A stretch of DNA of 64,000 nucleotides, from contig CM074804.1 in NCBI GenBank assembly GCA_037447605.1, forward strand, positions 5,185,909-5,249,908. The letters are read 5' to 3'. The notes below the pieces were generated by a model. That model did no database searches and was not told the origin of the DNA. It worked only from the letters and a program-made list of their open reading frames with translations. Both the position numbers and the translations under genes were made by a program. Of this stretch, positions 1,233 through 64,000 are shown one piece after another (the first letter of the stretch is position 1; each line of letters starts with the position of its first letter). This DNA is from Zygnema circumcarinatum SAG 698-1b. Its lineage: Eukaryota > Plantae > Zygnematophyceae.

Positions 1233-1275
1233 CTCCAGCAGCTTGGACGCGCGATGCTTCTCCGCNNNNNNNNNN

Positions 1276-3864: not shown

Positions 3865-4540
3865 GTGTTTGAATGTCTTCATCCGTGGGAACTCAAGTTC
3901 CAATGGAGGGCGACACCCGAGGTGGCGCCGGAAGTGGGGAGCAGACCCCTGCTTCAACAGCCTCTCCCCCGGGTTCCTTGTGATCATTGTGGAAATTGTT
4001 TTGGTCAGGGTGCGGGTTTGTCCCGGCATATGCGCGCGTGTCCTCTTCGTCCTCCTCCCATTGTCGACCCTTCTTCTACTCCCTCTTCTTCTCTACCCGT
4101 CACTGCCACCCCTGGGTCTACTTTGCATGTTGGGCCTAGTCCGGCTGCTTGNNNNNNNNNNTGTCCTTGGGTCGTTTTTTGTTGGGTCCCGTCGTCCTCG
4201 TCTTTACGCTCGTATCCCACGGGCTTTGCGTGTTTGTGTTCGTGATGCTTTGCGTTTGCCTCTTGCTCGTCTTGCGTGTGATCCATCAGATGTTGCTGCT
4301 TGGCATGTCCTTCTTCTTTTCCCCCTTTGGGTTTTAATTTTGCCCCCTCGTGGTGGGGCCAGCGCCGTTCGCGAGACCCGTCGGCGATGTCTTCGTTTTT
4401 TGGGTGGGGATTGGGAGCTTTTGCAGGCCGAGCACGCNNNNNNNNNNCGTGCTGCAGTTGTTGGTGACCGTGTTGGTGGACTTCCGCCGCTCCCTCCTCG
4501 CGACGTGCCTCACATCGGTCACCTTCGCGGCTGCTTCTAA
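3865..4540 (+). mobile_element. non-LTR retrotransposon fragments (CRE/R2-superfamily-like), interrupted by two N gaps
   Basis: N-terminal zinc finger CDHCGNCFGQGAGLSRHMRAC, and WHVLLLFPLWVLILPPRGG...RRRCLRFLGGDWELL resembling the pre-RT region of CRE-type elements. RT and endonuclease are not visible (gap 4438-4447). Confidence 0.7.
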
Positions 4541-24743: not shown

Positions 24744-25096
24744 CCGTAAAACCGAACACGTTGAGAAATTGAGAAACGATTTTACTTCATTTCTCAAATC
24801 TCAATCTTGTTGAACAGGGTTGGACTTTGAACACTCGAGGTCGAAACTTTTTCTATTTACGACAGCGAATTTTTTTAGAGAAAGGGTTCAAAGACTCAAT
24901 ACGTGTGGATTCCAATTTTTGCCACATAGGTCTGTGCGATTCGAGGGATCTGGTTAACCCGGGCATCATTCGTGCCGTACGGCTCTTTCCACGAGCTGAT
25001 CAACAATTTCTGTACGGACCTGCGCTTGACGATCCACTAGAATCTGATTGTTGATCGGTGGACCCAAAGAAAACTCAAATTGAACACGAACGATAA
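24744..25096 (+). repeat. dispersed repeat R1, copy 1
   Basis: Colinear with 57690-58042 over about 350 bp (e.g. acactcgaggtcgaaacttttt, gttcaaagactcaat, cgtgtggattcca, ttgttgatcggt, aaagaaaactcaaa). Confidence 0.88.
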
Positions 25097-26363
25097 TCGT
25101 TTGAGGAAGCCGGTTTACAGTGACTGCACTGTTGGCAATTTGTTGCTGCTGGAGCTTTGAATTGAAGGCATGAATCGAGCGACGAACGGACCTGGCTTTG
25201 CTGCATTACACGCTCATTCCGATTATTGATAATTGGATTTCCCTTGCAAGAACATGCCTTGTGAAATGTGGCAGACAGTCTGCACCATATTCTTTTTCTC
25301 GAGCAAAATTGTCGTCGTTTGAAGGCTGAAATTATGCATGATCCAATGACTAGACCATTCCAATCCTCGTTGATCTGACCGATTCGACCATAGTCGAACA
25401 TGCTGTCACCCTGAAAATGTTTGCTTTATCCTGGCAGCAGCATCACTCCACTGCACGATTTAAACTGAAATGACGCTTTTGAACCCAGTAAAGTAGAGCT
25501 TCAACAAAACAACAAAGAAAATGGTTGTGCCTACGCTGACTTTATCAGTTCAGTGAAAGCACTCTATGCGACACTCGTACTAAAATAGTGAAAGAAATAA
25601 AGTAAACAGTAAATAAAAATACTACTAAAATAGTGCTGGTTAAGGGTTTTTTTATCACAAGAAGAAAAATCCTTGTCGATTTGATAGGGTCGACAAATGC
25701 ACAAAGGTTTCGGCCGCGCAGGCACAGGGGTTCCTAGAATAGAGCTGTTCTATTTTTTTAAAACTTTTGAGCTCTTCTTGCCTGTCTGTCTGTCTGTCTG
25801 TCCGAGGCGGAAAGCACCAAAACCCTTGCGATGGTTGTCAAGTGCCCATCGCCGACTGCTCAGCGGTGTGCTCCACACCCTGCACACACAGCACCGCCAT
25901 CAATGGAAAGTGAAAAGCATAGAAGTGCTTAGGTCCTTTGCGACCAGTCCCTCGTGGTTCCTTCCCCATGCTGCTTTTGTCCATGTACATTTGATGGCCT
26001 CGCCATCGTGAGATCAATGCCATTTTCCTCCCCTGAAAGTGAGAATGAAAGAAAATGAACTGGCGTTGGACTCACGGCGGCGACGCCATCATCCTGCACA
26101 AGCACAACACGACCAAAGGCAAAATTTGCAACCAATGGCAATGGCAATGTCGATCGCGTGGCGCGTGACGTGGCTATTGACTTTATCGAGATGGCTGGCT
26201 CTGCCGTAAAGTCCGAACAGAAAGCAACTCTCCGGAAAAGAGGACAGCGCGCTGGAGTGGGGACTCCGTGCTGGAGAGCGGAGCTCGCGGTGAGGCGGAG
26301 GGATGGCATAGGGGAAGTGGCAGAGAGAGGGGGAATCGAAGGTAGAGCTCCTCTCAAGCAGGC

Positions 26364-46160: not shown

Positions 46161-46621
46161 ATCACTGTCGCAGTTCAAGCATTGCATTCAAATCAAGCCT
46201 GAACATGCATACGACAGCCTGAATTCGAATGTGATGACAGAACAAGAACTTATTCACACAGACTCCCGCTGGAGCTCAAACGACGTAGTGACACAAACAT
46301 TGAACGAATGTCATATTTTATTAAGGTGTCAAGCTCTGCATCCTTGAAGGAGAAGTTTGCGCCTACGCCGCCACTCTGCACCGGGAGTGACCTTCAAACA
46401 GCCCTATTAAAGCACCATTCTGACTATTTTTTATCTTCTAGAGGAATCGTGTCAAGGCCTAAAGCCAACATGCAAGTGCTGCCGAGCAGCCCCCTCGGCA
46501 GATTGCCTTCACTCGCCAAAATTGTGCACATGCAGGAAAAGCACGGTCCAAAGCCCTAGAAACGCCTACGAATCCTTTACGCTTCCTCATACTCGCAGAG
46601 CAATTAAGCCCCAACCCTAAA

Positions 46622-49600
46622 TCAAGGTGGCAAAGGCGTGCAGGTGAGGGCCTCTCTGCCGCCAAGTATCTGCCAATCGAAGAAGACGTACTGCAAGTTG
46701 TCCTTATAGCGGTGCAGCTCCACTGCGAAGAGGTTGGTGCCGTTTTTGAGCCACCCGCCTGACAAGTTCAGCGGCCAATACGACCAGCTGCCGTACCACC
46801 CCGCATAGACAGTCCCATTCAGGGGACCTGAAGAAGGAGGAGGAAGGTTGGAGGTTCTGTAAGCTTCGACTCCGTTGATGTAGAGCACCTGGCACAGGGC
46901 GAAAAATATGTATGGTGAGCACATTTTGGTCAGCAAGGCTTGTCATGAATACGGATTGTCATTTAGCAGACGAAAGAAAAAGGAGGTCGCAATATAACTG
47001 TGATCGAGGAAGGAACGCCACTTAATTGTAGTAAAATAATATTCATCTACAGCTTTGGCAATTAATGTAAATTTCGATGTGCTAATGGCTTTCATGCTTC
47101 ACAGGTTGACTATGGCGACTGGCCGAGCGATGAGGGGAATGGTCATAGCAGTTGAAAGTTGGTTCATCGCAGTTGATTTCTCCACCAAACCATGCGAAGG
47201 TTAGGAATAGATTCTACGAATTTTCTGCTTGCGGAGGACGGAAAGGAAGAACTTTGAGAACTTTGGGGGACAATCTGGAAGTTAAATTACTTGAAAAAGT
47301 AGACTAATAAAAAGATAAACCTTAAATACCGAAAAATCGGTCTCCAGTGAAGTAATTATATGGTGCATTGAAAGTTGAACTTACAATAGCATCGTTGACC
47401 AGAAAGGAATTGTTCAGCTGAAAGTAGCACTGAGCATCAGGGAGCTCAATAGTCTTCCGGAAGTAGAAGGTGCGGCGCAGATCAGGGCCTAGGATGAGTG
47501 TTGTTTTTCTCCAATAGAATCCATCAGTTGCAAATGTTGACAATCCTGCGTGCACCACGTTACTGGTGAGAACGCAAACAACAACGAGATTCTTCACTGT
47601 ACTGGAACCTCTTGGTCAGTAGTCAAATGCCTTTTTTCCACACGACCAGCTTTCAATACCTGTGCTCCAGGAACTTGAGTTGAAGCTCGGTAGCATCCAG
47701 TCAGATGACGGCAGGGGACTCGTTCCATCGAGATACTGAAAACCATCGTTCTCCTGTGCATGAAGCAAAGGAAGGACGATGGATTCAGAAAAAAAGGTGG
47801 TAAACATATACACTGCTCTGGAAAACTCAACTTGATGTATATGAACTAAAGTCTTCTCTCTCTCTAATGCCATCATTGCTGCAGAGTAGCTGCACGTACT
47901 TACCGGAATTATTTTTTGCACCACTTGTCGCACGCAAGGCGGTGATGGGCAGTTCACAGGGACATTGCGGAACAAATTCATGTCAAATGCAACATTGCGC
48001 TTCCAATTCCAAGCTGCGTGGAGTCGCACTGCTATCCAGTTTACGCCAGGCTGCAAATGCTCCCATTTCCCGCTTCCTGTATTCGGTGAGTGCACAAAAA
48101 GGAGGTTCAACTGCAAACCATCACTGCTCAGATTCGTGCCAACTTCAAAATCCTTTTGGGTATACCGCGGTCCATGAAGGCCTCATACCTGGAGCAGTGC
48201 GGTCGTGTTGCGGAGGCACGATGTGCAAATTTGATAGTCCCACGGCAGATCGGTGCTCGTCCAAGTGTTGGTGTATGTAGGTGAAGGAGTGTTGTAGGCA
48301 ATCGAGCCCCAGGGTAGTTTCTGCCTGTTCAATTCGATTCCATTCAAGAATACGATGGCGGCATCTGTTCTCCGAATGTTAAAACCTGGACGACAAAAAG
48401 CGTGCAGGTCCCAGTTGGTCATAACTTCCTTCACCTGAGAACCAAAAACAAAATGAGAAAGCTAAACGGATTGACTCGTGACTTATGCTGCTGGCCCTAC
48501 ATTCTGGCTCGCACTAGAAATTATCAAAGAAAATGTGCCTCCCACAGAATTTGCAGGACCTTACTTCAGCCTGCGAGAGAGCAATCTTATATTAACAGAA
48601 GGATACATGACCTTCAAGCAGGAAAAGGGTGATGCCATTGACAAAGTACTCCGCCCTAAAGGTTGAGCAGGGATTGAAGAAATACCTAAGCTGTAAGTGT
48701 TGGAGATGTCGTCGGTTGAAACAGTGAAGTTCTTGACGAAGTACGATACCAAACTGTCTGGTGTATAGTACCTCAGAGTGGTGTTAAAGACATCCCATGC
48801 AGGTGCATCCAAATTATATCCAAGAGGACCAGTGCCCATTGCCCAGTTTGAGACATTCCTGCAAATTCACAAACTGAGTCCTCGTTCAATTCAAGGTGAA
48901 AGCCAGAATTTTGCTAGAGAAACCAAGTTATACTAACAGCAGAAAGTTTTGCAAAGATCAGATTTCTAAATTACTTCAATTCGTATTGTTGGATGGGAAA
49001 AGAGACAAGGATGTTGAAGAAGGGGTTGGACGTAAGGAGTGGACAGAAGCGAGTCTCATTTGAACGGCGACATGGCTTTCGACTTCAGATTTGTGAGATT
49101 CACATCATGTCTATATCAGCGCCCCAAACAGTTTGAAAAGAATGGGTAACACTACAGCCAGTCAGAGATATGAACGCTGCAGGAATGAACCAAATCTTTA
49201 CCCTATGCGCCATGCTGAATTGATAGCATCCAAATTGGAAATCCTGTCATTGTAGAACCATCCAGTCGAGTTGGCCGGCCACAATTGCGAAATGGCTGTT
49301 GCATTCACCACAGGGAGGCAACTCCCCGCGTTGCAGACTTGTCCAGAAGGGCAGTTCAACTGGCTCGCGCCATTGTCAACCAGTCCATCGCAATTGTCAT
49401 CCACGCCATTGCACCTGTTCGAAGAAGCAGGGGTCAAAGAGTTAAGCAGGAAAGTTATGAAAAAGGAAGGAAAAAAAGGAAAAAGGAAGGTTCTGGAAAG
49501 ATCTGATGTGTCTGAAAAGTACATTTCGAAACTGATGGAAACGTGCAAATGCAGCTTTTGCAGCCTTGTCTTCTCTCGTCCATGGAGAAGGACCCAAAGG

Positions 49601-52600
49601 GATTCCTGCTTTCCCATTTTCTAATCAACAGACTTCTGAGAGTCCTCTCGCCCTCGTGCAGTTCCAATGAGAAGATGGAAGGGGCAAAAGGATCGATCAG
49701 AACTTACACTTCTGGCGAGACCGGCTGAGCGGTGCAGTTCACAAAGAAACCCTGAAAGCAGACCTCTATGCCGGAGCCACAGCCAGTGAAGCATGGCCTC
49801 GTCAAGACCTTACCATCACTGCCCATGTCTACTGTGCCTGCACCGCTCCAACAGACAGTCAGCTGTAGTGAGCAACTCATGAACTGGTCCTTGTACAGGC
49901 CCGAACTCCGTTACTGAAACCGAGTGCTGCTGTCGTATATACAGCCTTGGAAACTGCCATTGAGGGGATTACTTGCGATACATCGGCTGAAATTATGACA
50001 GGTGGGTTGCGAAGTCGGCAGTAGCACGACTCTTTACTACTACTATTCGAGAGTCCCCTTACAAGATATCGCGCATCTATAGGTACAGTAGGTTCAATGG
50101 GGTTCCATCCTTTCAGCATGCAGGATAGACAAAGGAGCTGTTCCAGTGGCTCGTGGAAAAGTGCAGACGAGGGAAAGATGTTTACCGTCATTATCGTTGT
50201 CAACTCCGTCACATATTTCAGGAGTGATGCTGATGTTGCCAGCGCAGGATGGGCTGCCAAGTTCAGGAAATGCGTGTAAGATGAACGATAGACGACAGGC
50301 ATTTACGCCTTACAAATTTTGCAAGAAAGGAAACGGTGTCAGTGTAGAAGGAAAGCCGAAGCACTCACTTGCGAATGGCAGATATTCTCATGTCGAAGCT
50401 CAGCTGCCCATGCCTCCACACATGAGAATGCATTTCTGCGGCGATGGTATTCACTCCTTCCACGAGGTAATAAGAGTTGTTTGGAGCTGGCAGCGGCAGG
50501 GTGGCAGTTGCCCAAACATTGAAGTCTCCCTGTTTGGTGGCCTGCACGTAAGCGCATCACCCAAGAACGAGCACTGTCAGAAAGGAATCTGGTGCAAGCA
50601 ACGCTTGGAGTGTAAAAAAGCATTCCTCAATGAGAGTGTTTCATGGATGATGAGCCTTACTGTGGTAGCATTGGTTACTGTGCCGTTAGGCATACTCCCA
50701 CGGAATAATTCTTGGCGATTGAGGTACACTACTGCGCCATCGTGAAGATTAACTTCCAGAACAAGCGCTGAATAACAGCCTGTGCTGGTGAGCGTGAAAT
50801 TCGTCCGAAAGTAGTATGTTGTGAGCGCTGGGGCCAGCCATGTTTTGATGTATGTATACTTCCCTGGCAGATACAATCCCGTACCACCACCAGTTAACGG
50901 AAACAGTTTTAGAAAAGGTATGTACGGACAAAGTTTGACGAGTGCGTGAAGGAACAAAGCTTGCAATGTTTACACACGAAAACAAAAATAGTGGAATCCC
51001 AAATTTGCAGGACAGATAATTTGGAGGAGGGATAAAAAGCAAATATCGGCTATCGCTTCTTAAAATTTGCAGCATACGGAGTGCTGCTTCGACTGTACAG
51101 TGAGCAACACAGCGCTGCCAAAGCAGACAGCAGAGAGACAGGGGAGCTTACAGGTGGTGAACCCAAAGGGCGCGGAGCCAGTTGCCCAGCCAGTTGTCGT
51201 GTCAGCTGCTGGACTGTAGAAGGATGGATGGAGTTCACTACTGGAATCGTTATACAGCCAAGTAGAGCCAGCAGACAGGAGGCCGCACTGGCTGCAAAGA
51301 GCACACACAAAGGACAGAACATGGTCATATGTCAGCGGCTTTGAAAAGGTCTGCGCCCTTGCTTAGAAGGGTCAAGGGAAAGGCCGGCAGGAACGAAAGA
51401 GTAATCAGTGCAACACGAAATCTAAAATCAAAGCAAAAGACGCTTACGTCGGACCGGTGCAGGCGATAGGATCGTTTCCTGGCAGCAGAGTGATTGGGCT
51501 GTCCCATGCAGATCCCAAGGCCAGCTCCAGATTCGGCGGTCCGACGCTGTTGCAGACAAAGCTATACTGAGCGTTCACGGCCGGAAGGGATTTTGTGCCC
51601 TCACACTGCCTGCAAGGACAGGAGCAAAACACGAATCCATAAAATCACCCCGCTGACTGAAAAGCACTTGTTTCCTCAATGATTCCTGCTTGCTTGCTTT
51701 TTCTAGGCTCAAAAACAAAGGAGAGCTGAGTTCCCACTTGAAGTAGAGACCGGGGGAGGGCTTGATGGTCCAGGATGCAGCGGGGCCGGCGACGAACTGC
51801 AGAGTAAGGCCCTGCCCGCAGGGGCCGGGGTCGCGGTACTCGACGGTGATGTTCGAGGGGATGAAGGCGGGCAAGCTCGAGGGCGGCAAAATGGCGACGA
51901 TATATGTCTGTTGGGCCAATAGAACTGCATGGAATTCTCTCGTCACCGTCACCATGCTGCTCTGCAGATTTCCATCCAACGTGAGGACAGCACCGTCGCT
52001 CACGCGGGTGATGCTGACGTAGCTGCAAGGCATAGAGGAAAAGATTGGGTTAAAAAGAAGCCGGTATGCTTTTCTCGTCCTGGTTCTCTCATAGCCTCGA
52101 TCTTTGCAATGATCGGCGGCAAAAGACCGCTGCTAGAGTAAACGCGAAACGCCGACGACATCAAACCATTCCCTAGAAAATCAACCTATCGCCTTATCCT
52201 TCTCCTCCTCCTTCCACTCTATTACTCTCTATCGCATCATGATTGCTCGCAAGAAAATGCAATGTACCTAAACGATCCGCGAGTGTTTGCGGCATCAGAC
52301 ACGAAGCCGGGTTCGAAGTAGGAGAGTTTGAGGGTGCGGTAGCAGGCGCCGGGGCACTTGTAGGCGTTCCATGAGGCGTTGAACTGGCAGTCCCCCCCCC
52401 CCGCGGCGGCGGCGGGCGGGAGGATGGCCGAATTGTTCGCCACGATGTACCCGGGCGCGCCCACCACGCTCCCGTCCGCGTCGTAGATACTGTAAAACAT
52501 CGACTGCTCGCCTCCATCCGAAATTTCGTCCCACGGCTGCACGATTGCGGGGACAACGGCTCAGGGGTCTGAAGCTCTGCTGTGATTTTTCTCGAGTGTT

Positions 52601-55600
52601 CCATGAACCTGCTGTCTATGGACTCTTGGCTGGCATGTTTTGGAAGGATGAGGTTGAACTAGTTGAATCAGAAACATGAGAACCGCCTGAACTGGCGGGA
52701 GTAAACTCACCACAAATCGAACTTTCCTGGGGTTCAGCCATATGGGGATGGTGTTGGGAGCGAACTTGAGAGCCTGCAACACGTTTTTTGAAACAGTATG
52801 AAGGAAATCAGCCGAAAGGAATCACTGCCATCACGTGCAGTAATAGGGAGTTCCAGCATCCAGGAGCGGTGCAGAAGGGAGCATGCAAAGATCGCCACTG
52901 TACCTTCAAGGAGTGACCAGAACTCCAATATCCACCCGGCCCTGTTGCCGCAATGCCGGCTGCCATTCTACAGGTGCTATCGAAGTTGCTAAAGCTGAAC
53001 AGGCACGTATTCAATGTCATTATCGATGTCATGGACGGGGGCAACAACAACTTTCAATTTCTGATCAATCATGAAAAATAATATGATGTCCTCTAGCTGT
53101 ACAGGTCAAACCCCAGCTACACATGCAATAAATCGATACACCGAATTACTATATAGTCAGAAAATCCCTACCTGACATTTTCAAGAGAGTGAGTCTTCCA
53201 TCCTTGACTAGTTCGATACTGGTTGATGATAACCCCGACTGTCGGTGCGGTGTTCATCAACCCTCCAGTAGACCGACCGCGGGCTCCCCAGAGCAGCGGC
53301 ATGCTGCAAAGGTCAGGAGATAACGACAAGCCAACCCCACCAATCCAGCATGTCAATTGAAGTAACCCTCATGATGCATCAGCAGCATCCGGGCATCGTG
53401 ACAGCTTGCAGAGCCATGCAGAACGACGAAAATGGAGAAGGGAGAGGCGAAAAGCGGCGGTGGAGGAACGGGAGGCCCTCACGTGCAGCCTGAGACAGGG
53501 CGGCAGTTCGCCCAGGGGCTGTCCGACCAGCACTGGGTGGGGTTGCCGTAGTTCTCAGTTTGGCCTACAACCCGCGTGTTCCTCACAGTGATCTGCTGGT
53601 CCTGGTCCAGGTCTATGCCCCACAGGTTATCTGAAACTGCGCTGTCGGAAATGGTCAAAATGTCGGTGTTGTGCACGAAAAGTCTGCCAAGGCCGTCATC
53701 CATTTTAAGTCAACCATCCATCAGAAGAGGTCTACTACACTAAAACCAGGATTTGGGGTCACTGCAATAAGGCAGTCGAGTTTGTCACTGTGTTATTGCT
53801 TGATTATGCAGGGAATAAATAGATGTTTTGCAGATTCTAAAGGTACATTGCCTGCGCTTAGGGAGAGTAGACGAGGAGGGTAACAGAGAACTCACCCAAT
53901 CCAACGGTTCTTGTAAACATTGAGCTTGTCCATGGAATTTGGCGCACCAAATGTCTGCTCAGTCCCACAAGAAAGAGCACCAATCGCAACTGTCAAGGCA
54001 GCTGTACAACAGTAGCTACTGAAGTTTGAGCAGATTGCGATTGAAACACTGAAAAACGCGCACAAACTCGCAGCACCGCTCTTTCACGGCAGACAGTAAA
54101 TAAAATGGTCTGACATTGCCGGTTGGGCACTGCAGCGAATCACGACCCTGAGGCCGACACTATAAGCGGGGCAGAGAGCTCACCCAGTCGGAATTTCGTG
54201 GATTGATGCCATGTGGATAAGTGCGAATTCCTACAGTAACAAAAAAAGGAACACAAGAACAAGGAGTCGTCGTCAACAAGAAAAATGATTCCCTTGAAAA
54301 CTTGAAAGAGAAGCTTTTGCACTTCTCCACAATTTAGAACATTATGCAGCCCTTGTGCCAATGCCAAGTTACCTGAGAAGGCTTCACAAACTAAGGCATG
54401 ACTCCTATGACACCCTTTAACGGGTTTTACAATTTTCCATTCTTCAACTTTTGGCTTCAGTTTTTGGAATTGAAGTTTTAGTTTAAAATGCAATGCAATA
54501 TACAAGATGGCTTCCAACATAAGCTTGGGTTCATTTACGCTACTGAAATGTATGCCAGGTCCTACCTATTCCATCGTTGGAATGTGCGACGTTTCCGCTG
54601 AAGTTTGTCAAGGACATGAGAATCGGAGACACATTTTTAATGCGTGGAATACTCAGAGAGGCGCCTCGTACTGCATTTCGAAGCTCGATCCAGAACCTGC
54701 ATGACGGGAGGGAAGAGAATCACTTCGCGTGGCAATCGATGGAACTTGAGGTGCTGATTTACAAGGAGATTAATTCTGAAGGAACAGACTGCAGCATCAT
54801 TCAGCACACGAGGAGAGATAACAGACACGCCTCGAACAAGTGAACAGCTAAATCCACAGCTTCGCAAGGAAACAGCAAGGAGGAAACGAGCGCGAGAGCC
54901 GACCCGCTTGCTTCAGAGCCGGCAGCCACATTATTGATGATGTTGTTCTGTACGTTTGAAATCCAGAACGTTGCCGGTTCATTGTCAGTTTCGTCCGTCA
55001 TCGTAGTGCTGCCGGTCTGCATGATCATGCGATCCACTGCAGCCACCTCCGCATGCAATGCCATGTCTGAGGGTGATGCAGACCAGCAACTGCGATAGGC
55101 AGCGAGGCAGTGGCTGCTGCTCATGCGCGCAGGCAAGAAGGGGGAAGCGGGCGCGCACCCTTGTTGGTGAGGATGCCGATGTTGTTGATGAAGGTGTTCC
55201 CGACCTCCCCGCCCTCCTGCAGCATGCAGCAAACAGCACGATGCAGCGACAGCATCAGCACCATCATGAGCAGCACCATCATGAGCAGCACCATCATGAG
55301 CAGCACCATCATGAGCAGCACCATCAGGAGCAGCACCATCATGAGCAGCACCATCATGAGCAGCACCATCATGAGCAGCACCATCATGAGCAGCACCATC
55401 ATGAGCAGCACCATCATGAGCAGCACCATCATGAGCAGCACCATCATGAGCAGCACCATCAGGAGCAGCACCATCATGAGCAGCACCATCATGAGCAGCA
55501 GCACCATAACGAGCACCATCAGCGAGCAGCATGCACCTCGGTCATGAAGCAGTGGCCGCTGGTGTTGTACGCCACGTTGCTGTCAGCCGTGATGTTGTCG

Positions 55601-57139
55601 GAGGCGTGCAGCACGATGCAGCGCTGCAGGAGGAGGAAAGCGCTTTGTTAGGATCCGCCAGAGAGTCTTGCGGCGCAGCCATTAGCCCGCCTCTAGCGGT
55701 GAGTAGCAGGAGGCCCTTAGAACAGGTGCGGGAGTGCAGGGCGGCCTGCCTGCTTGCTGTGCACAAGAGCGTTCTTGCGGACGACGCTGTTGGGACTCGA
55801 TCCCACGACGTGGAAGTGGATGTTGTAGCGGCCGAGCTGGCCCTGCTGGCCCATCCGCAGGTACTGCACGCCCTCGATGTACTGCGGAATGCTCGTCATG
55901 AACACGATGAAGTGCCCGCCTGCATCCCCCCTCCCGCTGCTGCCTCCCTCAGCATCCCGCTGAAGGCAGAGAACAGAGTCCATGGCCGCACTCCGCAGTT
56001 GCCGGGGGGGAAGGCAGAGCTGGCCGACCTTCATACTGATTCGGGGCCGGCTCGTCGGTGCCGGTGATGACAATGTTGCGAGAAAGGAGCGCAACCTCAC
56101 CACGCTGGTCAATGAACCCTCCCATGCCGTCAGACGCGCGCTCACCAAAATGGTCGTATTGCAGTGGCGCATCCAACAGTATGATGGAACCTGTTCCATT
56201 TCGGGCCACTGGATTTCCAACCCAAAACATTTCCATCAATATAAACACAATGACCGTGGAAGAATTCCTGAAGAATGGCAGTAGGGTATCTAAAATTTCA
56301 GGTGCTGACAGCAGAAATTGACAGTGGAGTTCATACACCGTCAATGTACACTTTTCGTTCAATTAAAAAAGCCAAACTATGACCAACCAGCTCTGCCTTA
56401 ACTCAGCCTCAGTGTAAGCAAGTCGTTGCCTACCGCCCGTAATGTTGAACACTTCCGCCTGTTTCCGGTCGAAGTCGGTAGATGAAAGCACAATTTGAGA
56501 GCCCACCGGCCACAGTCTAGTGACATCTGTGCTGACGGAAATACTTGAGTCACCATCCTTGGCCGTGCGGCTGAGCTTGACCCAGACGGGCATGCTGGCC
56601 GGGCCGGGGAGGCCGTGGAGGCGCACCTGCCCGCCGACCTGCGCAGGGCCGCCCGGCAGGGCAGTGAGTGCGCTACAGCAGCAGCAGCAGCAGCACGAGG
56701 AGGAGGAGGAGGAGCAGCAGGAGGAGGAGGAGGAGAAGGAGGAGGAGGAGGGAGAGAGGAGGAGGAGCAGGAGGAGGAGGAAGAGGAGGAGGAGGAGGAG
56801 GAGGAGGAGGNNNNNNNNNNCGCGCTGAGTCCCGGCCAGGGGCCCGCGGGCGGCTTTCCGGCGGCCCGCGGAGGCGGGAGTGGAAGAGAGGGGGCGCTGA
56901 CCTTGCGGCGGAGGTACGGGCGGCGGGAAGGGAGGCGGAGGCGAGGGCGGGGGGGGCGAGGGGGGCGGCGGGGAGACGGGTGGGAAGAGCAGGGAAGGGG
57001 AGGGGTCGGCGAGGAAGGCGCAGGGCGAGACGAACACGTCGGTGAAGGTCGCCGGCGCGGCGCGCGCGGTCAGCGGCAGGTCGAGGGCGGCGAGCAGCGC
57101 CGGAAGCAGAAGCACAGCCGCGCGCACCACCGCCGCCAT
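46622..57139 (-). CDS. large secreted G8-domain/parallel beta-helix (TMEM2/CEMIP/PKHD1-like) protein, copy A, with MopE-like motifs and three C-terminal beta-sandwich modules
   Basis: Signal peptide MAAVVRAAVLLLPALLAA, Pro-rich linker, RGEVALLSRNIVI, GQQGQLGRYNIHFH, RCIVLHAS, NNVAAGSE and FSGNVAHSN. About 25 exons traced in phase to the stop at 46622. The G8 exons fall in the N gap at 56811-56820. Confidence 0.88.
55261..55500. repeat. 15-bp minisatellite (CCATCATGAGCAGCA)x16 in an intron of copy A
   Basis: Sixteen tandem units counted, two of them with ATG changed to AGG. The same intron in copy B has 2 units (62671-62700). Confidence 0.95.
56697..56810. repeat. (GGA)n tract; paralogous (CCT)n tract at 61324-61587
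   Basis: Direct inspection. The tract is intronic and abuts the N gap in copy A. Confidence 0.95.
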
Positions 57140-57689
57140 GGCTCCTCCTCCTCCTCCTCCTCCTCCTCGTCCGACCGCCGGTCGCCGTTCCCGCTCCGCC
57201 TCCGCCCCCCGCTCCACTTCCCCCCTCGCCCGCCCGCCCGCCCGCGGCCGTGCCTCTCCGTCCGTACCGCTAGGGACAAAACGCCCGCACGTCACCTTCC
57301 TCAGGCCACCAGCTGGCCCTGGCCCGGCCGGGCCGATCCGCGGACCGCCGCCGGGCGAATCGGAGCGCTGCGCACCGCCGGGCGGGCGGGCGGACGGTCA
57401 GACGGGCGGGCGGGCGGGCGGGCGGGCGGGCGGGCGGGCGGGCGGGCGGACGTGCGGGCGGCCAAAGTCTCGATGGTCAAAGTTTGTCGCAGAAAATTGA
57501 AATACGACAAGGTGACAACGAATGCTTGAATGTCGCGAGTTCAATGCCATTTTCCTTCTTTGAATGTCTGTTTGTTTCTTTATTCACGTGGTTTAATGCC
57601 CGACGGCAGCAACTTGACCAACCTCACCCTCGCGGCTGCTTACCAGTAGGGCTGCGCTGGTGAGCCTACGCGTAGCTTTCCGCTTCTAG

Positions 57690-58042
57690 CCGTAAAATTG
57701 AACAGGCTGAGAAATTAAGAAACGAGTTTACTCAATTCTCAATCTTATTGAATAGGGTTGAACTTTGGACACTCGAGGTCGAAACTTTTTCGATTTAAGT
57801 AAGCGAAAAGTGTTAGAGAAAAAGTTCAAAGACTCAATGTGTTCGTCGCACGTGTGGATTCCAGTTTTTGCAACGTTGGTTCCGTGCGATTTGAGGGACG
57901 ACCCCATTGTCCGTACGATTCTTCCCGTGAGCCGATGAACAATTTTTGCACTGAAATCCGGGTCCAAGCGCATTGCAATCCGCTAAATTCTCATTGTTGA
58001 TCGGTAGACCAAAAGAAAACTCAAACTGAAAAGGAACGATAA
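57690..58042 (+). repeat. dispersed repeat R1, copy 2, in the palindrome spacer
   Basis: Colinear with 24744-25096. Confidence 0.88.
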
Positions 58043-59785
58043 CTAATTCTTCAATGTTTCTTCAGTTCTCCATAAAAATTGTATTGGGAAAAAAATAAGA
58101 ATTCATTTCTCATTTGTCGAAATGAATCGTGTTACAAATAGGTGGACTTTTTTCAGAAAGTGGTTTTGAAAGTTTTAAATTTTGAAGAGCCAAAATCTTT
58201 TATGTCTTTTTTCTCAACCTGTTCGATAACACAAATAACTTTTTTCGTTTTGTCCTTCGCTCCACAGCGACCAGTTCCTCGTGGTTCCCCATACTGATTC
58301 TATTCATGTATTTTTGATGGCGAGATCGATAGGGGTTGTCCAACTTCGCGAAAAGTTACGAAAAGCATTTATGAAGTTAAGTTCACGAGACTACTCCGCT
58401 CCAGGCGGATCGCTTCATCTCCGGGGTACTCGTTTTGATGGAAAACTTACGGACGGACATTCCGACGATGTTCAAGTCAGGCAACCGCCAGTGCCACGTC
58501 CCTTCAAGCAGAACAAATGCATGCCCGTTTGGGTGCCACGGTGGCGGCTACGATCAACCGCCCGCGGCCGCAGCCGCCCGGGACGCCACCGACAAGATAC
58601 GCCAGGCTGGCGAACTGCGCTGTTCGTACGGTCAAGCGAGCCGCCAACTAAAAGATTGAACCGAAAGATATGGAGTGACGTGGCACGTGAAACTGACTCA
58701 GCCAGCTGTGCGCTTGACGACAAACCCTCTGTAGAATGAAGTTTCAAGGAGGCTGCGCGAGAGACGGAGGGCGTTGAAATCTGACGACGGCAGGTTGTCG
58801 GCGCTGGCGGCGCCTTCCGCCAGCTGGCATCAACGAGGGAGGTCCATTGGACGCGAGAGGATCTCCAGGATCCACTACGATCTTCCTTCCGATTTCGGAT
58901 ATAGGTTCCGTACCATACGGTGCAGTGGGTCGTGGCACTTTTGACACCTTCAGTTCCACCGTACCTTCGTCCTCAAGATCGAGGCAGGTACCGTACGGGA
59001 TCCTCCTGTCCTTGCGGTACAATCAAACTTGCGCTGTCAGAGATTGTCGAGAGCTCTAGAGTCCGGCGATGCGTCGTGCCTACGGCTCGTAGTCGCCGTG
59101 GCCGGCTTGTCGCGGCCTGCCGCTGCCGCCCCGCCCGCCCGCAGCGGACGGAGCTTTTTTTTCACCCCCTTCATGGCCAGAGTGGCGTCATCATGATAAT
59201 GCCCCGACCGGGCCACGTCACGCGCTCCCTCGCTCCCGTCCGCCGCGAGGCAGGACCGTACGGAGGAAGCTTGCGCGGCGGGCCTGCCGCTATGGGCGGC
59301 CGCAACGGCACCAGCACGGCAGCACGATTCGTACAACCTGGCTGGGATAGCACCAGCTAGCGACACGTGGTGATAGCCGAGTAGATCTTTGCTACCCGAT
59401 TATCTAGCGTTAGGATCTTGACCTCAGATTCGACGACAACCGACAAGGCCAAGGGTTATCCGAATCCAATATGGCGGTCATATCCGATACGCCCGCGATC
59501 TGAACCTGGGGCGGTACAGCCGCTGCAAGGCCGCCCTCAGCGCCGTACAGAGAGGCGCGTGAAGCCGGCGGCTCGCCGGTCAGACAAGCCGTTTTCGTTG
59601 CCAGCTGGTGGCCTGAGGAAGGTGACGTGCGGGCGTTTTGTCCCTAGCGGTACGGACGGAGAGGCACGGCCGCGGGCGGGCGGGCGGGCGGGCGGGCGAG
59701 GGGGGAAGTGGAGCGGGGGGCGGAGGCGGAGCGGGAACGGCGACCGGCGGTCGGACGAGGAGGAGGAGGAGGAGGAGGAGGAGCC

Positions 59786-62700
59786 ATGGCGGCGGTGGTG
59801 CGCGCGGCTGTGCTTCTGCTTCCGGCGCTGCTCGCCGCCCTCGACCTGCCGCTGACCGCGCGCGCCGCGCCGGCGACCTTCACCGACGTGTTCGTCTCGC
59901 CCTGCGCCTTCCTCGCCGACCCCTCCCCTTCCCTGCTCTTCCCACCCGTCTCCCCGCCGCCCCCCTCGCCCCCCCCGCCCTCGCCTCCGCCTCCCTTCCC
60001 GCCGCCCGTACCTCCGCCGCAAGGTCAGCGCCCCCTCTCTTCCACTCCCGCCTCCGCGGGCCGCCGGAAAGCCGCCCGCGGGCCCCTGGCCGGGACTCAG
60101 CGCGGAGCTGAGTGCGCGGGCGGGCGGGCGGGCGTGCAGGGAACTGCTCGTGGGTGTGCCCCGCGTCGCCGCCGCCGCCGGGCAGCGACCCGCCGCCTCC
60201 CGGCAACGATGCGTCTCCGCCGCCGCTCGACATCCCTCCGCCATACACCGCCGGTACGCGCCATGGCTCACTCTCCTCGTGCGTTCCTGGGCGACGCCTG
60301 GGCCCCATCGTGCTCAGCTCGCTTTCCGAAGCACAATGCACAAGCTTAGTACAGCGCAATGCCCCTGTTTTGCTTTAATATAGGCTACATGCGGGTACTC
60401 CAAATATGGCTGTCGCATATTTATTCTCGGCTGCTCTTCTCTTCCCTCTCCCCTCCCCCTTCCTCTGTCTCGGCCACGCCCCCCTCTCTCTCACTCTCTC
60501 CCCATCTCTCCCGTCCTCTCGTCTTTCTCGCTGTATTCTCCCTCTCCCTTCCTCTCCGCTTTTTCTCCTCCGCTCCCTCTCTCACCCTCTTTCCCCCCTT
60601 TCTTCTCCCCCCTTCCCCGACCGACTTTCTTTTTCTCCCTCTACCTCTCCACTATCTCCCTCGTTCTCTCTCCTCTCTCTCCCCCTCCCCGCTCTTTTCT
60701 CTCTTACTCGTCCCCACCCCACTCTCTCTCTCTCCCTTTCTCCCTCCCTCCCTCCCCGGTCGAGCAGGGTTCCAGCTGTGGAGCGACCCGGCGACGTGGC
60801 CGGGGGGCGCGGTCCCGGGCCTCCCCGGCGTGTCGGAGCTGGCGAACGCGACCATCCCCTGCGGGCAGCTCGTCATGCTGGACGTGCCGCTCCTCGTTCT
60901 GGCCAACCTGCGCGTGCAGGGCCTCCTCAGGTGCGCCCTCCCGCACCGCACCGCACCGCACCGCACCGCGCCCTCTCCCTGCACACCACGTCTCCATGGC
61001 TGACCGCGCTTTGCATGTGCGGTGCTGCGCAGGGTGCTGGACCACCCCTTGCTGCCGAGCATCTACGTGAAGGCGAACTCCATCCTGGTGGAGGGCCAGC
61101 TCTCTGCCGGCACGCCCGCTCGGCAGTTCTCGCAGAAGCTCACCTTCGAGCTCACGCCGAACCCCAACAACCGCGCGCCCCTCCTCTTCACCAGCTTCGC
61201 ACCCGCGGAGCCGCTCTATCCGCGTAACCTCGGCCACAAGGCCTTCGCCGTGGTACATCCTCTGCTTCCTCCTCCACTCTCCCTCCTGCTCCCCCTCCTC
61301 CTCCTCCTCTCTCCCTCCTGCTAACCCTCCTCCTCCTCCTCCTCCTCCTCCTCCTCCTCCTCCTCCTCCTCCTGCTGCTCCTCCTCCTCCTCCTCCTCCT
61401 GCTCCTCCTCCTCCTCCTCCTCCTCCTCCTCCTCCTCCTCCTCCTCCTCCTCCTCCTCCTCCTCCTCCTCCTCCTCCTCTTCCTCCTCCTGCTCCTCCTC
61501 CTCTCTCCCTCCTGCTCCTCCTTCTCCTCCTCCTCCTCCTGCTGCTCCTCCTCCTCCTCCTCCTCCTCCTCCTCCTCCTCCTCCTCGTGCTGCTGCTGCT
61601 GCTGCTGTAGCGCACTCACTGCCCTGCCGGGCGGCCCTGCGCAGGTCGGCGGGCAGGTGCGCCTCCACGGCCTCCCCGGCCCGGCCAGCATGCCCGTCTG
61701 GGTCAAGCTCAGCCGCACGGCCAAGCAGGAACAGACCGCCCTTGCAGTTGACGTGAATCTGGTTGGTCAGTGGAAGGCGGGATCACAAATTGTTATCACC
61801 TCCACGGACTACGACCGAACTCAAGCAGAAGTTTTCACTATCACTGGAGGTAATTTGGGCAATCCAGACGCTGCAGCCATGTGATGCTTGTCGGAATGAC
61901 TTTTTTGGTCAGGCAGTAACCAATCTGAGTTGAACATCGGGGTATGGTGAGGGCAGTTACTCGAAACGGGACAGGTTCCATCCTCCTGTTGGATGCGCCA
62001 CTGAAGTATGAGCATTTTGGAGAGCTTCTTGGAGCCTCCGACGGCATGGGAGGGTTCATGGATCAGCGTGGTGAGGTGGCGCTCCTTTCTCGCAACATTG
62101 TCATCACCGGCACCGACGAACCGGCCCCGAATCAGTATGAAGGTCGGCCAGCTCTGCCTCCCCCCCCGGCAACTGCGGAGTGCGGCCATGGACTCTGTTC
62201 TCTGCCTTCAGCGGGATGCTGAGGGAGGCAGCAGCGGGAGGGGGGATGCAGGCGGGCACTTCATCGTGTTCATGACGAGCATTCCGCAGTACATCGAGGG
62301 CGTGCAGTACCTGCGGATGGGCCAGCAGGGCCAGCTCGGCCGCTACAACATCCACTTCCACGTCGTGGGATCGAGTCCCAACAGCGTCGTCCGCAAGAAC
62401 GCTCTTGTGCACAGCAAGCAGGCAGGCCGCCCTGCACTCCCGCACCTGTTCTAAGGGCCTCCTGCTACTCACCGCTAGAGGCGGGCTAATGGCTGCGCCG
62501 CAAGACTCTCTGGCGGATCCTAACAAAGCGCTTTCCTCCTCCTGCAGCGCTGCATCGTGCTGCACGCCTCCGACAACATCACGGCTGACAGCAACGTGGC
62601 GTACAACACCAGCGGCCACTGCTTCATGACCGAGGTGCATGCTGCTCGCTGATGGTGCTCGTTATGGTGCTGCTGCTCATGATGGTGCTGCTCATGATGG

Positions 62701-64000
62701 TGCTGATGCTGTCGCTGCATCGTGCTGTTTGCTGCATGCTGCAGGAGGGCGGGGAGGTCGGGAACACCTTCATCAACAACATCGGCATCCTCACCAACAA
62801 GGGTGCGTGCCCGCTTCCCTCTTCTTGCCTGCGCGCATGAGCAGCAGCCACAGCCTCGCTGCCTATCGCAGTTGCTGGTCTGCATCACCCTCAGAAATGT
62901 CATTGCATTTGGAGGTGGCTGCAGTGGATCGCCTGATCATGCAGACCGGCAGCACTACAATGACGGACGAAACTGATAATGAACCGGCAACGTTCTGGAT
63001 TACAAATGCACAGAACAATGTCATCAATAATGTGGCTGCCGGCTCTGAAGGAAGCGGGTCTGTCTTCTCGTCTCCTTTTGCTTGTTCCTCATGTGTTCTT
63101 TTCATAACTCATTCAGTAAACTTCCACATTGAATGCCGTGAATCAGTCTGTATGCCTGGTGGAGGTATAGAAAAAGTTAGCAAGTTAGCAAGCCAGCGTC
63201 CTTGACGTCCTGGCTATTTGTTATGCAGATTCTGGATCGAGCTTCGGCGTGCAGTAAGAGGCGCCTCTCTGAGTATTCCACGCGTGAAAGATATGCTTCC
63301 CCTTCACATGTCTCTGACAAACTTCAGCGGAAACGTGGCTCATTCCAATGGGGGAGTAGGTAAGACCTGGCATACATTCCGGTAAAGGAAATGAAACCCA
63401 CGGTTATGCTGGGACCTTTGTATATTGAACTATGTAAAAATCCCTACAACCTGAAACTCAAAAAAGTAAAGCCAAGATTTGAAGAATGGAAAATATTAAA
63501 AACTTTTTGAATGGTTTCATGGCAGTGAGGCCCTAGTAGGTGTAGCGGTCGTCAGGTAACTTGGCTTCGGCTCAAGGGCTGCATAAGATTTCGGAAACTG
63601 TGACGACATGCAAAATATGCAAAGTCTTGCAAGTCTTGACTGGAATCGTTTATCTTGTGAAACGACTTCGCTAAATTATATATCTATTTTTTTTTCAACT
63701 GTAGGCATTCGTACGTATCCGAATGGCATCGATCCTCGAAATGCCGACTGGGTGAGGTTCACTATGAATCATTTCTCGAACTGCTCGTTTAATGGTTTTT
63801 TCTCCGGATTTGCATGCTTTGCTTTCAATTCAAATGCGTTCTGACAGCAGTTGGTGCATGCATTTGGACAGTCACAAGGCAAACCCAACTACATGGATAA
63901 GCTCAATGTCTTCAAGAACCGGTGGACAGGGTAAGCCTCCAACGCATGTACTGGCCCGCCACGTACTCCTTCGTAGCAGTATTTATCATCGTGAAAGCTG
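59786..64000 (+). CDS. G8-domain/beta-helix protein, copy B (5' part; runs off the window)
   Basis: Exons 59786-60023, 60768-60930 (GFQLWSDPATWPGGAVP), 61033-61252 (VKANSILVEGQLSAGT...LGHKAFAV), 61645-61849, then further exons matching copy A. Confidence 0.9.

What the first reader, a model, noticed from the sequence alone, without database searches (positions are those of the whole stretch)
54500..64000. Head-to-head gene palindrome with a mosaic of homogenised and diverged tracts
Two paralogs diverge across a 2.28-kb spacer (57318-59599). Tract 1 (A 56558-57317, B 59600-61725) and tract 2 (A about 55150-56130, B about 62040-62810) are nearly identical, including introns and UTR. Between them even the protein differs (DGDSSISVSTDVTRLWPVG versus QEQTALAVDVNLVGQWKAG). 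Identity then fades gradually after tract 2. Both frames stay open, so this is an old duplication undergoing arm-to-arm gene conversion. It may keep the signal and catalytic cores uniform while other segments diversify.
Basis: partly seen in the sequence, partly recalled or inferred. Interest (0 to 1): 0.8.

Follow-up and report, generated by a model that had tools for sequence, protein, structure and literature searches.

The report
Gene-converted inverted G8 gene pair
Two old, head-to-head copies of a secreted G8/CEMIP-type beta-helix gene in a streptophyte alga share two stretches kept letter-identical by copying between the copies, and exactly these stretches are extremely GC-rich; this is a clean but ordinary case of gene conversion with a GC-bias footprint.

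Summary
Two divergently oriented, intron-rich G8 + CEMIP-beta-helix genes face each other across a 2.29-kb single-copy spacer. Copy A is on the minus strand from 57139 downward. Copy B is on the plus strand from 59786 and is cut by the window end.

- **Identity mosaic.** Tract 1 (B 59604-61725) and the tract 2 core (B 62161-62807) have no substitutions, introns and 5' flank included. Between and beyond them, introns are unalignable and pS is 0.33-0.75. Identical runs of 647 and 525 sites compare with at most 97 in 10,000 permutations.
- **Not a polishing artefact.** In three independent DNA data sets the tracts are single contigs at about twice single-copy depth. The B-specific diverged piece sits at single-copy depth.
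- **The gap in copy A.** The N gap (56811-56820) joins intron 1 to intron 4 and hides about 1.34 kb with exons 2-4. Depth shows at least exons 2 and 3 exist, identical to B.
- **Expression.** B is shown spliced, including B-specific exons. An RNA run also holds A-specific words.
- **Composition.** GC3 is 0.93 in the tracts and 0.49 in diverged exons. Non-coding GC is 0.66 against 0.42.

Best reading: recurrent arm-to-arm gene conversion confined to two homology blocks, with a GC-biased footprint. I found no support for selection keeping "cores" uniform. This is a new member of a known kind. The scan's first-reader notes report similar patchwork tracts elsewhere in this genome.

The parts
46622..57139 (-). 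Copy A of the G8/CEMIP-beta-helix gene. Exon 1 is 57139-56902. Exons 5-12 are 56638-56434, 56208-56029, 55919-55750, 55623-55537, 55216-55159, 55036-54904, 54696-54566 and 54230-54184. Further exons run downstream to about 46.6 kb.
   Evidence: Exons were mapped from copy B through the alignment, with AG/GT (one GC) splice flanks and an open frame. RNA run X13 holds 0.44 of the sampled words of 46600-54900.
56811..56820 (.). Assembly gap in arm A. It hides about 1.34 kb equivalent to B 60105-61448, which covers the rest of intron 1, exons 2-4, introns 2-3 and the start of intron 4.
   Evidence: The gap's flanks align to B 60104 and B 61449. Contigs covering B 59792-60662 and 60766-61034 run unbranched at about 2x depth in DNA runs.
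56558..57313 (-). Tract 1, arm A, as assembled: 5' flank/UTR, exon 1, part of intron 1, the gap, the end of intron 4 and the first 81 nt of exon 5.
   Evidence: 0 substitutions against arm B outside the (CCT)n array.
57318..59603 (.). Single-copy spacer between the arms. It has (CGGG)n at 57379-61, a dispersed TE-like repeat at about 57690-58321 and a GC-rich stretch at 58473-59603.
   Evidence: No arm homology. Word depth is 1x at 58270-59629. A 74-80% match to window 24744-25998 and a depth of about 2900 at 58100-58296 mark the repeat.
59604..61725 (+). Tract 1, arm B (2.12 kb): promoter/5'UTR, signal peptide and Pro-rich exon 1, exon 2, G8 exons 3-4, introns 1-4 and the first 81 nt of exon 5.
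   Evidence: Identity data. Double depth in X1, X2 and X6. GC3 is 0.87-1.00.
59786..64000 (+). Copy B of the gene, cut by the window end. Exons: 59786-60023, 60140-60253, 60768-60930, 61033-61252, 61645-61849, 61957-62142, 62252-62421 (GC donor), 62548-62634, 62745-62802, 62925-63057, 63229-63359, 63705-63751, and a further exon from 63872.
   Evidence: Open 584-codon frame. Spliced RNA contigs of X13 confirm introns 4-13. Pfam matches G8 and CEMIP_beta-hel. The protein is 44-58% identical to Closterium and other streptophyte G8 proteins.
61726..62031 (+). Diverged block in arm B (rest of exon 5, intron 5, start of exon 6). Its counterpart in arm A is 56557-56140.
   Evidence: 36-71% identity, with pS 0.45-0.75 and GC3 about 0.5. 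B-specific contig 61696-62108 lies at 1x depth and is present, spliced, in RNA.
62040..63060 (+). Tract 2, arm B. The zero-substitution core is 62161-62807 (exon 7 to exon 9 with introns 6-8). Graded flanks are 62032-62160 and 62808-63060. The arm A counterpart is 56131-54901.
   Evidence: Identity data. Contig 62079-62633 lies at 1.7-2.0x depth in three DNA runs. GC3 is 0.94.
55256..55531 (-). 15-bp minisatellite in intron 8, with 18 copies in arm A against about 4 in arm B (62640-62710).
61267..61586 (+). (TCC)n microsatellite of about 105 units in intron 4 of arm B. The arm A part (56697-56810) abuts the gap.
   Evidence: Read contigs break here.

Best explanation
Two paralogous genes for a secreted protein lie head-to-head. 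The protein has a signal peptide, a proline-rich linker, a G8 domain, a CEMIP-type beta-helix and further C-terminal modules. The duplication is old, both copies are under purifying selection, and both are transcribed.

Repair or recombination that uses the nearby inverted copy as template (intrachromosomal, non-allelic gene conversion) has repeatedly overwritten two blocks. One is about 2.1 kb, from the promoter to mid-exon 5. The other is a 0.65-kb core with graded flanks reaching about 1 kb. Conversion stops where homology has been lost, which explains the sharp edges at 59604 and 61726 and at intron 10. Older events with other end points left the graded flanks.

Because mismatch repair in heteroduplex DNA favours G/C, or because the same simple-repeat-rich hotspots also drive allelic GC-biased conversion, the converted blocks have drifted to GC3 of about 0.93 and intron GC of about 0.66. 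Unconverted parts stay near 0.5 and 0.42.

**Shown:** the duplication, the mosaic, true identity in the reads, transcription, and the GC contrast.

**Inferred:** that conversion is recurrent, that it is GC-biased, and that homology loss sets the edges.
For: - **Identity pattern.** The inverted repeat has zero-substitution runs of 647 and 525 sites against a permutation maximum of 97.
- **Non-coding identity.** Introns and the 5' flank inside the tracts are identical, while introns outside are 43-72% identical. Selection on the protein therefore cannot explain the tracts.
- **Age of the duplication.** Diverged exons have pS 0.33-0.75, pN 0.10-0.31 and dN/dS about 0.25.
- **Depth.** Three DNA data sets from three studies give one unbranched contig per tract. 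Depths are 120-154 against 59-85 (X1), 82-109 against 34-50 (X2) and 44-48 against 27-31 (X6). The B-specific contig 61696-62108 lies at 1x.
- **Sensitivity of that test.** Where the arms do differ (62120, 62852), the other arm's letter surfaces in some run. Hidden differences in the cores would therefore have shown.
- **Composition.** GC3 is 350/377 in the tracts against 62/126 in diverged exons (Fisher p = 9e-25). Non-coding GC is 0.66 against 0.42 (p = 1e-27), and 0.65 against 0.42 without simple repeats. Transition zones are intermediate at 0.60.
- **GC3 dip.** GC3 falls to about 0.5 in the diverged block between the two tracts. A plain 5'-to-3' gradient does not explain that.
- **Precedent.** GC-biased arm-to-arm conversion is established for primate sex-chromosome palindromes (PMC8981503, PMC3723533).
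Against: - **No outgroup or population data.** Direction (AT to GC) and recurrence are not shown. One recent event per tract would give the same identity.
- **GC islands without duplication.** The spacer stretch 58473-59603 has GC of about 0.6 and is single-copy. Other islands of 0.3-1 kb occur elsewhere in the window.
- **Unchecked first-reader notes.** These report GC3 islands beside C-rich repeats in apparently single-copy genes of this genome.
- **Limits of Logan contigs.** They pop single-base bubbles, so a few hidden arm differences cannot be excluded.
- **Other paralogues.** Further copies at 95% identity or more to exons 4 and 8 exist elsewhere. Donors other than the partner arm are possible.
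- **Adjacency not confirmed.** The A-side junction and the linkage across the repeat in the spacer were not independently confirmed.
Confidence: 0.7

Rival explanations
1. Recombination or repair hotspots cause both features independently of paralogy. Simple-repeat-rich, promoter-proximal segments are hotspots whose allelic GC-biased conversion, or a local mutation bias, makes them GC-rich. The same breaks occasionally use the inverted copy as template. On this reading the GC spike is not a product of arm-to-arm conversion, and one recent event per tract may suffice.
For: - 14 of the window's 28 tandem-repeat arrays lie in 55256-62710.
- GC islands occur elsewhere in the window and in the single-copy spacer next to arm B.
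- Unchecked first-reader notes report GC3 islands beside C-rich repeats in other genes of this genome.
Against: - The GC3 switch coincides to the base with the identity breakpoint inside exon 5.
- The transition zones are intermediate in both identity and GC.
- The other islands in the window are shorter and less extreme, at 0.57-0.63.
Confidence: 0.17
2. Family-wide concerted evolution. The identical tracts in A and B were written from, or are exchanged with, other GC-rich paralogues elsewhere in the genome, not only between the two arms.
For: - Exon 4 lies under 5-14x single-copy depth, with variant letters at 61096, 61210 and 61219.
- Contigs leave the reference at 61000, 61255 and 62637, that is at exon edges.
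- The family is large and locally clustered in Closterium.
Against: - The long tract contigs (59792-60662, 62079-62633) lie at about 2x, not more, so most of the tract sequence exists in just two copies.
- Introns of the tracts are shared only by A and B.
Confidence: 0.08
3. Assembly or polishing artefact. The arms really differ in the tracts, or one arm is a mis-joined copy.
For: - A gap sits inside arm A, at the edge of a 100% identical stretch.
- Identical repeats are where polishers err.
- No read piece spans the whole locus.
Against: - Single unbranched contigs at double depth appear in three independent DNA data sets, with no alternative letters in the cores.
- Known arm differences at 62120 and 62852 are visible.
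- The assembly keeps arm-specific SNPs right next to the cores.
- The diverged parts prove there are two distinct loci.
Confidence: 0.03
4. Identity is kept by purifying selection on sequence (protein, codon usage or regulatory elements) without conversion.
For: The tracts hold the signal peptide, the G8 domain and the most conserved beta-helix exons.
Against: - Introns of 81-172 aligned nt, a 178-nt 5' flank and all synonymous sites are identical.
- Neighbouring exons have pS 0.33-0.75.
Confidence: 0.02

Closest known systems
Gene-bearing palindromes of primate X and Y chromosomes with GC-biased arm-to-arm gene conversion (PMC8981503, PMC3723533, PMC8600007)
   Same: Inverted arms around a unique spacer, genes in the arms, identity maintained by intrachromosomal conversion, and a GC-enrichment footprint.
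   Different: In this window the arms are only gene-sized (at least 4.4 kb seen, about 10.5 kb for the gene) rather than tens to hundreds of kb. Identity is a mosaic: two tracts at about 100% inside arms that are otherwise 40-80% identical, not above 99% throughout. The organism is a streptophyte alga, and nothing points to a sex chromosome.
Head-to-head or inverted paralogue pairs with partial interlocus gene conversion, e.g. vertebrate CYP1A1/CYP1A2 (PMC3199271), Drosophila duplicates (PMC3924832), and Hsp70 pairs (from my own knowledge)
   Same: An old duplication, divergent orientation, conversion limited to parts of the genes, and a mosaic of young and old segments.
   Different: A different gene family and lineage. 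The GC3 contrast (0.93 against 0.49), with a switch inside one exon, is unusually sharp.
G8 + CEMIP beta-helix proteins (animal CEMIP/KIAA1199, TMEM2/CEMIP2, bacterial G8 proteins, the large Closterium family)
   Same: Pfam G8 and CEMIP_beta-hel matches. The protein is 44-58% identical to streptophyte homologues over residues 107-580. A head-to-head pair of family members also exists in Closterium sp. Yama58-4 (L001).
   Different: An N-terminal proline-rich (SPPPP-type) linker and other C-terminal modules. No activity has been tested. The Closterium pair belongs to another subfamily and shows only 72-95% patchy arm identity, without identical tracts.

Membership tests
Interlocus (non-allelic) gene conversion between paralogues | Identical or near-identical fragments significantly longer than expected from the overall divergence (GENECONV-type test) | tested here: met
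   Runs of 647 and 525 sites against a maximum of 97 in 10,000 permutations.
Interlocus (non-allelic) gene conversion between paralogues | Homogenisation includes unconstrained sequence (introns, flanks, synonymous sites) | tested here: met
   Introns 1, 4 (unique part), 6, 7 and 8 and the 5' flank are 98-100% identical. Introns 5, 10 and 12 are 43-53% identical.
Interlocus (non-allelic) gene conversion between paralogues | The identity is real in the organism, not an assembly product | tested here: met
   Double word depth and unbranched contigs in X1, X2 and X6, with the B-specific block at 1x. One limit remains: contigs can hide isolated SNPs.
Interlocus (non-allelic) gene conversion between paralogues | Phylogenetic incongruence or observed transfer events (orthologues in other strains or species) | not testable with these tools
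No other assembly of this organism or a close relative could be reached.
GC-biased gene conversion footprint | Converted segments are GC-richer than unconverted ones at silent and non-coding sites | tested here: met
   GC3 is 0.93 against 0.49. Non-coding GC is 0.66 against 0.42. Transition zones are at 0.60.
GC-biased gene conversion footprint | Excess of AT-to-GC over GC-to-AT changes when polarised | not tested
   No outgroup was available. In the right-hand transition zone, arm A carries G/C where arm B carries A/T at 13 sites against 4 the other way (p = 0.049), which cannot be interpreted without polarisation.
Classical large palindrome (sex-chromosome type) | Arms above 99% identical over their whole length | tested here: not met
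   Overall identity is 87% over ungapped aligned sites, and large parts are unalignable.
Classical large palindrome (sex-chromosome type) | Spacer inversion polymorphism from arm-to-arm crossing-over | not testable with these tools
   Short contigs cannot bridge arms of 0.5 kb or more.
G8/CEMIP family | G8 domain | tested here: inconclusive
   The domain is split over exons. Separate hits score 15.9 bits (profile 1-41) and 19.3 bits (profile 48-86), each below the 22.9-bit cut-off. Colinear alignment to homologues that carry PF10162 supports the domain.
G8/CEMIP family | CEMIP-type beta-helix | tested here: met
   PF24606 scores 42.2 and 37.6 bits on exons 7 and 10, against a cut-off of 27.3.

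The most novel reading that the evidence does not exclude
Conversion between the two arms is itself the engine of the GC spike. On this reading, recurrent and probably mitotic intrachromosomal repair in a streptophyte alga drives silent sites to about 93-100% G/C. This happens within blocks whose borders have stayed fixed for a long time. The many 'patchwork' paralogue pairs noted in this genome would then form a natural series for measuring the strength and tract length of GC-biased conversion outside animals, fungi and flowering plants. Single exons would also be homogenised across dispersed family members.
Probability: 0.3. Interest if true: 0.55.

Novelty: new member of a known kind. Interest (0 to 1): 0.4.

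Why it matters
This is a well-delimited, read-supported example of partial concerted evolution. Identity and base composition switch together at single-base resolution inside an exon. That is the pattern expected if non-allelic conversion is GC-biased.

There are three practical consequences. Arm A of this assembly lacks three exons behind a 10-N gap, so any gene model through the gap is wrong. Short-read mapping and expression estimates for the two genes will be confounded in the tracts. Phylogenies or dS-based dating of this family in the organism will be misled unless the tracts are masked.

If the pattern is general in this genome, as unchecked notes from the scan suggest, the organism could serve to quantify GC-biased conversion in the algal relatives of land plants.

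Tried and rejected
- **The look-up of sequencing runs, first call.** It did not complete. The repeat worked.
- **Raw reads.** All runs are kept only as Logan contigs. Allele fractions, read pairs and long reads were therefore unavailable, and spacer inversion and the A-side junction could not be tested.
- **Second read laying on arm A.** Only one read-laying run is allowed. A's expression rests on word sharing and was not seen as spliced contigs.
- **Finding the organism's own proteins and other paralogues.** I searched with exon 7 and with the Closterium homologue P0001. Only other species came back (Closterium, Spirogloea, metagenomes). The paralogues hinted at could not be fetched.
- **Pfam on single exons.** It gives sub-threshold G8 hits because the domain is split.
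- **Word search of earlier findings for GC-rich tracts.** It was blank. A search for 'GC3' gave leads only.
- **GC against identity in the Closterium head-to-head pair.** Uninformative, because the correlation is dominated by one minisatellite.
- **Selection for uniform 'cores'.** Rejected, because non-coding sequence is equally identical.
- **Diversifying selection on the 19-residue block.** Rejected. pN is below pS, and the block is variable family-wide.
Full report
**1. What is there**

An inverted repeat occupies the last 10 kb of the window. Each arm holds the 5' part of an intron-rich gene.

I built the model for copy B on the plus strand. It has twelve exons from the ATG at 59786 to 63751, then at least one more before the window ends. 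The frame is open for 584 codons.

Spliced RNA contigs of run X13 reproduce introns 4 to 13 exactly. This includes a GC-AG intron at 62422-62547.

The protein begins with a signal-peptide-like segment and a proline-rich stretch. Pfam then matches the G8 domain, split over exons 3-5, with two sub-threshold hits that are colinear. The CEMIP beta-helix matches above threshold on exons 7 and 10.

The nearest proteins are a transcriptome protein (P0009, 58% identity) and many Closterium proteins at 44-55% over residues 107-580. Spirogloea also has a member. The organism is therefore a streptophyte alga. Its own proteins were not in the searched collections.

Copy A lies on the minus strand. Exons 1 and 5-12 map one-to-one with correct splice flanks and an open frame, and the gene continues to about 46.6 kb.

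**2. The assembly gap**

The ten N at 56811-56820 are not a small hole. The letters on the spacer side (A 56821) match B 60104 in intron 1. The letters on the other side (A 56810) match B 61449 in the (TCC)n array of intron 4.

Arm A as assembled therefore lacks about 1,344 bp with exons 2, 3 and 4 (497 nt of coding sequence). Joining exon 1 to exon 5 would shift the frame. The long ORF that crosses the gap is intron read-through.

Read data show the missing part exists. The contig over B 59792-60662 crosses the break point 60104/60105 without branching, at about twice single-copy depth, in X1 and X6. In X2 it appears as two overlapping contigs. The contig over 60766-61034 lies at 2.2-2.6x in X1 and X2. 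Arm A thus carries exon 2, intron 2, exon 3 and intron 3, identical to arm B.

Exon 4 lies under a higher, composite depth and cannot be assigned.

**3. The mosaic**

A global alignment of the arms gives the following picture.

- The inner edge is sharp, at B 59604 / A 57313.
- There are no substitutions from there to the gap (493 compared sites, one 8-bp repeat-length difference).
- There are no substitutions from B 61549 to 61725.
- Identity breaks abruptly at 61726 inside exon 5.
- Divergence is strong up to about 62031. Intron 5 is 43% identical and differs in length by 118 nt.
- Identity recovers from 62040.
- The core 62161-62807 has no substitution in 647 sites. The only difference is 14 extra copies of a 15-bp minisatellite in arm A.
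- Identity then decays through 98, 95 and 92% to 63060. Intron 10 is unalignable, and the rest is patchy at 39-80%.

With 370 differences in 2,763 ungapped sites, the longest identical runs (647, 525 and 187 sites) exceed anything seen in 10,000 permutations, where the maximum was 97.

Outside the tracts, divergence by block is as follows.

| Block | pS | pN |
|---|---|---|
| Exon 5b | 0.75 | 0.31 |
| Exon 6a | 0.45 | 0.10 |
| Exons 11-12 | 0.33 | 0.11 |

Pooled over these diverged exons, dS is about 0.8 and dN/dS about 0.25. The duplication is old, both copies are constrained, and the differing ages of the blocks point to several events with different end points.

**4. Is the identity real?**

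All available runs are stored as Logan contigs, so the test rests on word depth and branching. I laid three DNA runs from three studies and one RNA run on 58100-64000.

| Run | Single-copy pieces (spacer, B-specific block 61696-62108, 3' part) | Tract contigs |
|---|---|---|
| X1 | 59-85 | 120-154 |
| X2 | 34-50 | 82-109 |
| X6 | 27-31 | 44-48 |

The tract contigs are single and carry no alternative letters in the cores. The B-specific contig begins 30 nt before 61726 and ends 30 nt after the last dense difference. That is the expected result if a second, different sequence joins there.

Contigs do pop single-base bubbles. Even so, where the arms differ (62120, 62852), the other arm's letter appears in one run or another. 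A divergence of even 1% in the cores would therefore have surfaced.

Zero substitutions in 1,317 sites present in both assembled arms bounds arm divergence at about 0.2%. That is no larger than the difference between run X6 and the reference in single-copy DNA (8 in about 2,900).

The polishing-artefact reading is therefore rejected. Two things were not independently confirmed. One is the junction of arm A with the spacer. The other is continuity across the dispersed repeat inside the spacer.

**5. Expression**

X13 has no depth over the spacer or over introns such as 63419-63615, so it behaves as RNA. It holds a spliced contig joining the B-specific parts of exons 5 and 6. It also holds 44% of the sampled words of the A-only stretch 46600-54900, against 39% for the B stretch, whose exon share is about 40%. 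Both copies are thus very probably transcribed. Only B was seen spliced.

**6. Composition**

The tracts coincide with a GC spike.

- Third codon positions are G/C in 350 of 377 codons inside the zero-substitution tracts, 49 of 81 in the graded flanks and 62 of 126 in diverged exons.
- Non-coding GC is 0.66, 0.61 and 0.42 respectively. It stays at 0.65 against 0.42 when simple repeats are removed.
- Within exon 5, GC3 falls from 27/27 to about 0.5 at the identity breakpoint. This confirms an earlier first-reader note (s1-363550).
- GC3 is low in the diverged block that lies between two high-GC3 tracts. A simple promoter-to-3' gradient therefore does not fit.

GC-biased conversion between palindrome arms is documented in primates (PMC8981503, PMC3723533). 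The same footprint is the most economical reading here.

There are three caveats.

- The single-copy spacer next to arm B is also GC-rich.
- Half of all the window's tandem-repeat arrays lie in the arms.
- Unchecked notes from the scan describe GC3 islands next to C-rich repeats in other, apparently single-copy genes.

Hotspots that cause both GC enrichment and conversion remain a serious rival. Without an outgroup the direction of change cannot be shown.

**7. Beyond the two arms**

Exon 4 lies under 5-14x depth with three variant letters. Contigs leave the reference just outside exon 4 (61000, 61255) and at the end of exon 8 (62637). Other family members elsewhere in the genome are therefore 95% or more identical to single exons but have different introns. 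I could not fetch them.

In Closterium sp. Yama58-4, two members of another subfamily also lie head-to-head across 3.6 kb. Their arm identity is patchy at 72-95%, with no identical tract. Local inverted pairs are thus a habit of the family, and ongoing conversion is not universal.

**8. Verdict**

The core interpretation, an old duplication with arm-to-arm gene conversion, is supported. The adaptive gloss is not:

- Tract edges ignore domain borders.
- Non-coding DNA is homogenised alike.
- The diverged block is a family-wide variable stretch under purifying selection.

This is a new, unusually crisp member of a known kind of process. The scan's first readers noted similar patchwork tracts on other pieces of the same genome, but I did not check those notes.

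Noticed in passing
window 57690-58321 (spacer) and 24744-25998: The spacer holds a dispersed, TE-like repeat that is 74-80% identical to a stretch 33 kb away in the window. Word depth at 58100-58296 is about 2,900 in X1 against about 70 for single-copy DNA, so the element is high-copy in this genome.
   Followed up: partly
window 61033-61252 (exon 4) and 62548-62634 (exon 8): Further paralogues elsewhere in the genome share 95% or more identity with these single exons but not with the flanking introns. The signs are composite depth, variant letters at 61096/61210/61219, and loose contig ends at 61000, 61255 and 62637.
   Followed up: partly
window 62422-62547 and 55749-55624: Intron 7 of both copies uses a GC donor (GC-AG). 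A spliced RNA contig confirms it for copy B.
   Followed up: yes
window 55256-55531 vs 62640-62710: A 15-bp minisatellite in intron 8 has about 18 copies in arm A and about 4 in arm B, inside an otherwise identical tract. The (TCC)n, (GCGG)n and poly-C tracts also differ in length. Repeat-length change therefore outpaces homogenisation, or the assembly mis-sizes these repeats.
   Followed up: partly
window 51575-53703, minus strand: Downstream exons of copy A have intermediate GC3 (0.68-0.78), against 0.48-0.55 further on. These may be further or older conversion tracts. The matching part of copy B lies beyond the window end.
   Followed up: no
L001 1-18489 (Closterium sp. Yama58-4, CANIUD010000883.1): Two G8/CEMIP genes lie head-to-head across a 3.6-kb spacer, and a third family member lies tail-to-tail. 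Arm identity is patchy at 72-95%. One gene carries a long 25-bp-period minisatellite at 13995-15390.
   Followed up: partly
window 1266-1275, 4152-4161, 4438-4447: Three more 10-N assembly gaps. If they resemble the one at 56811-56820, they may each hide kilobase-scale sequence, possibly with exons.
   Followed up: no
window 62159 and 62505, run X6: A different strain or sample (X6, about 0.3% diverged in single-copy DNA) carries +CC and +CTCT inside tract 2, in a contig at about 1.7x depth. If both arms carry them, conversion post-dates the strain split. Contigs cannot tell.
   Followed up: no
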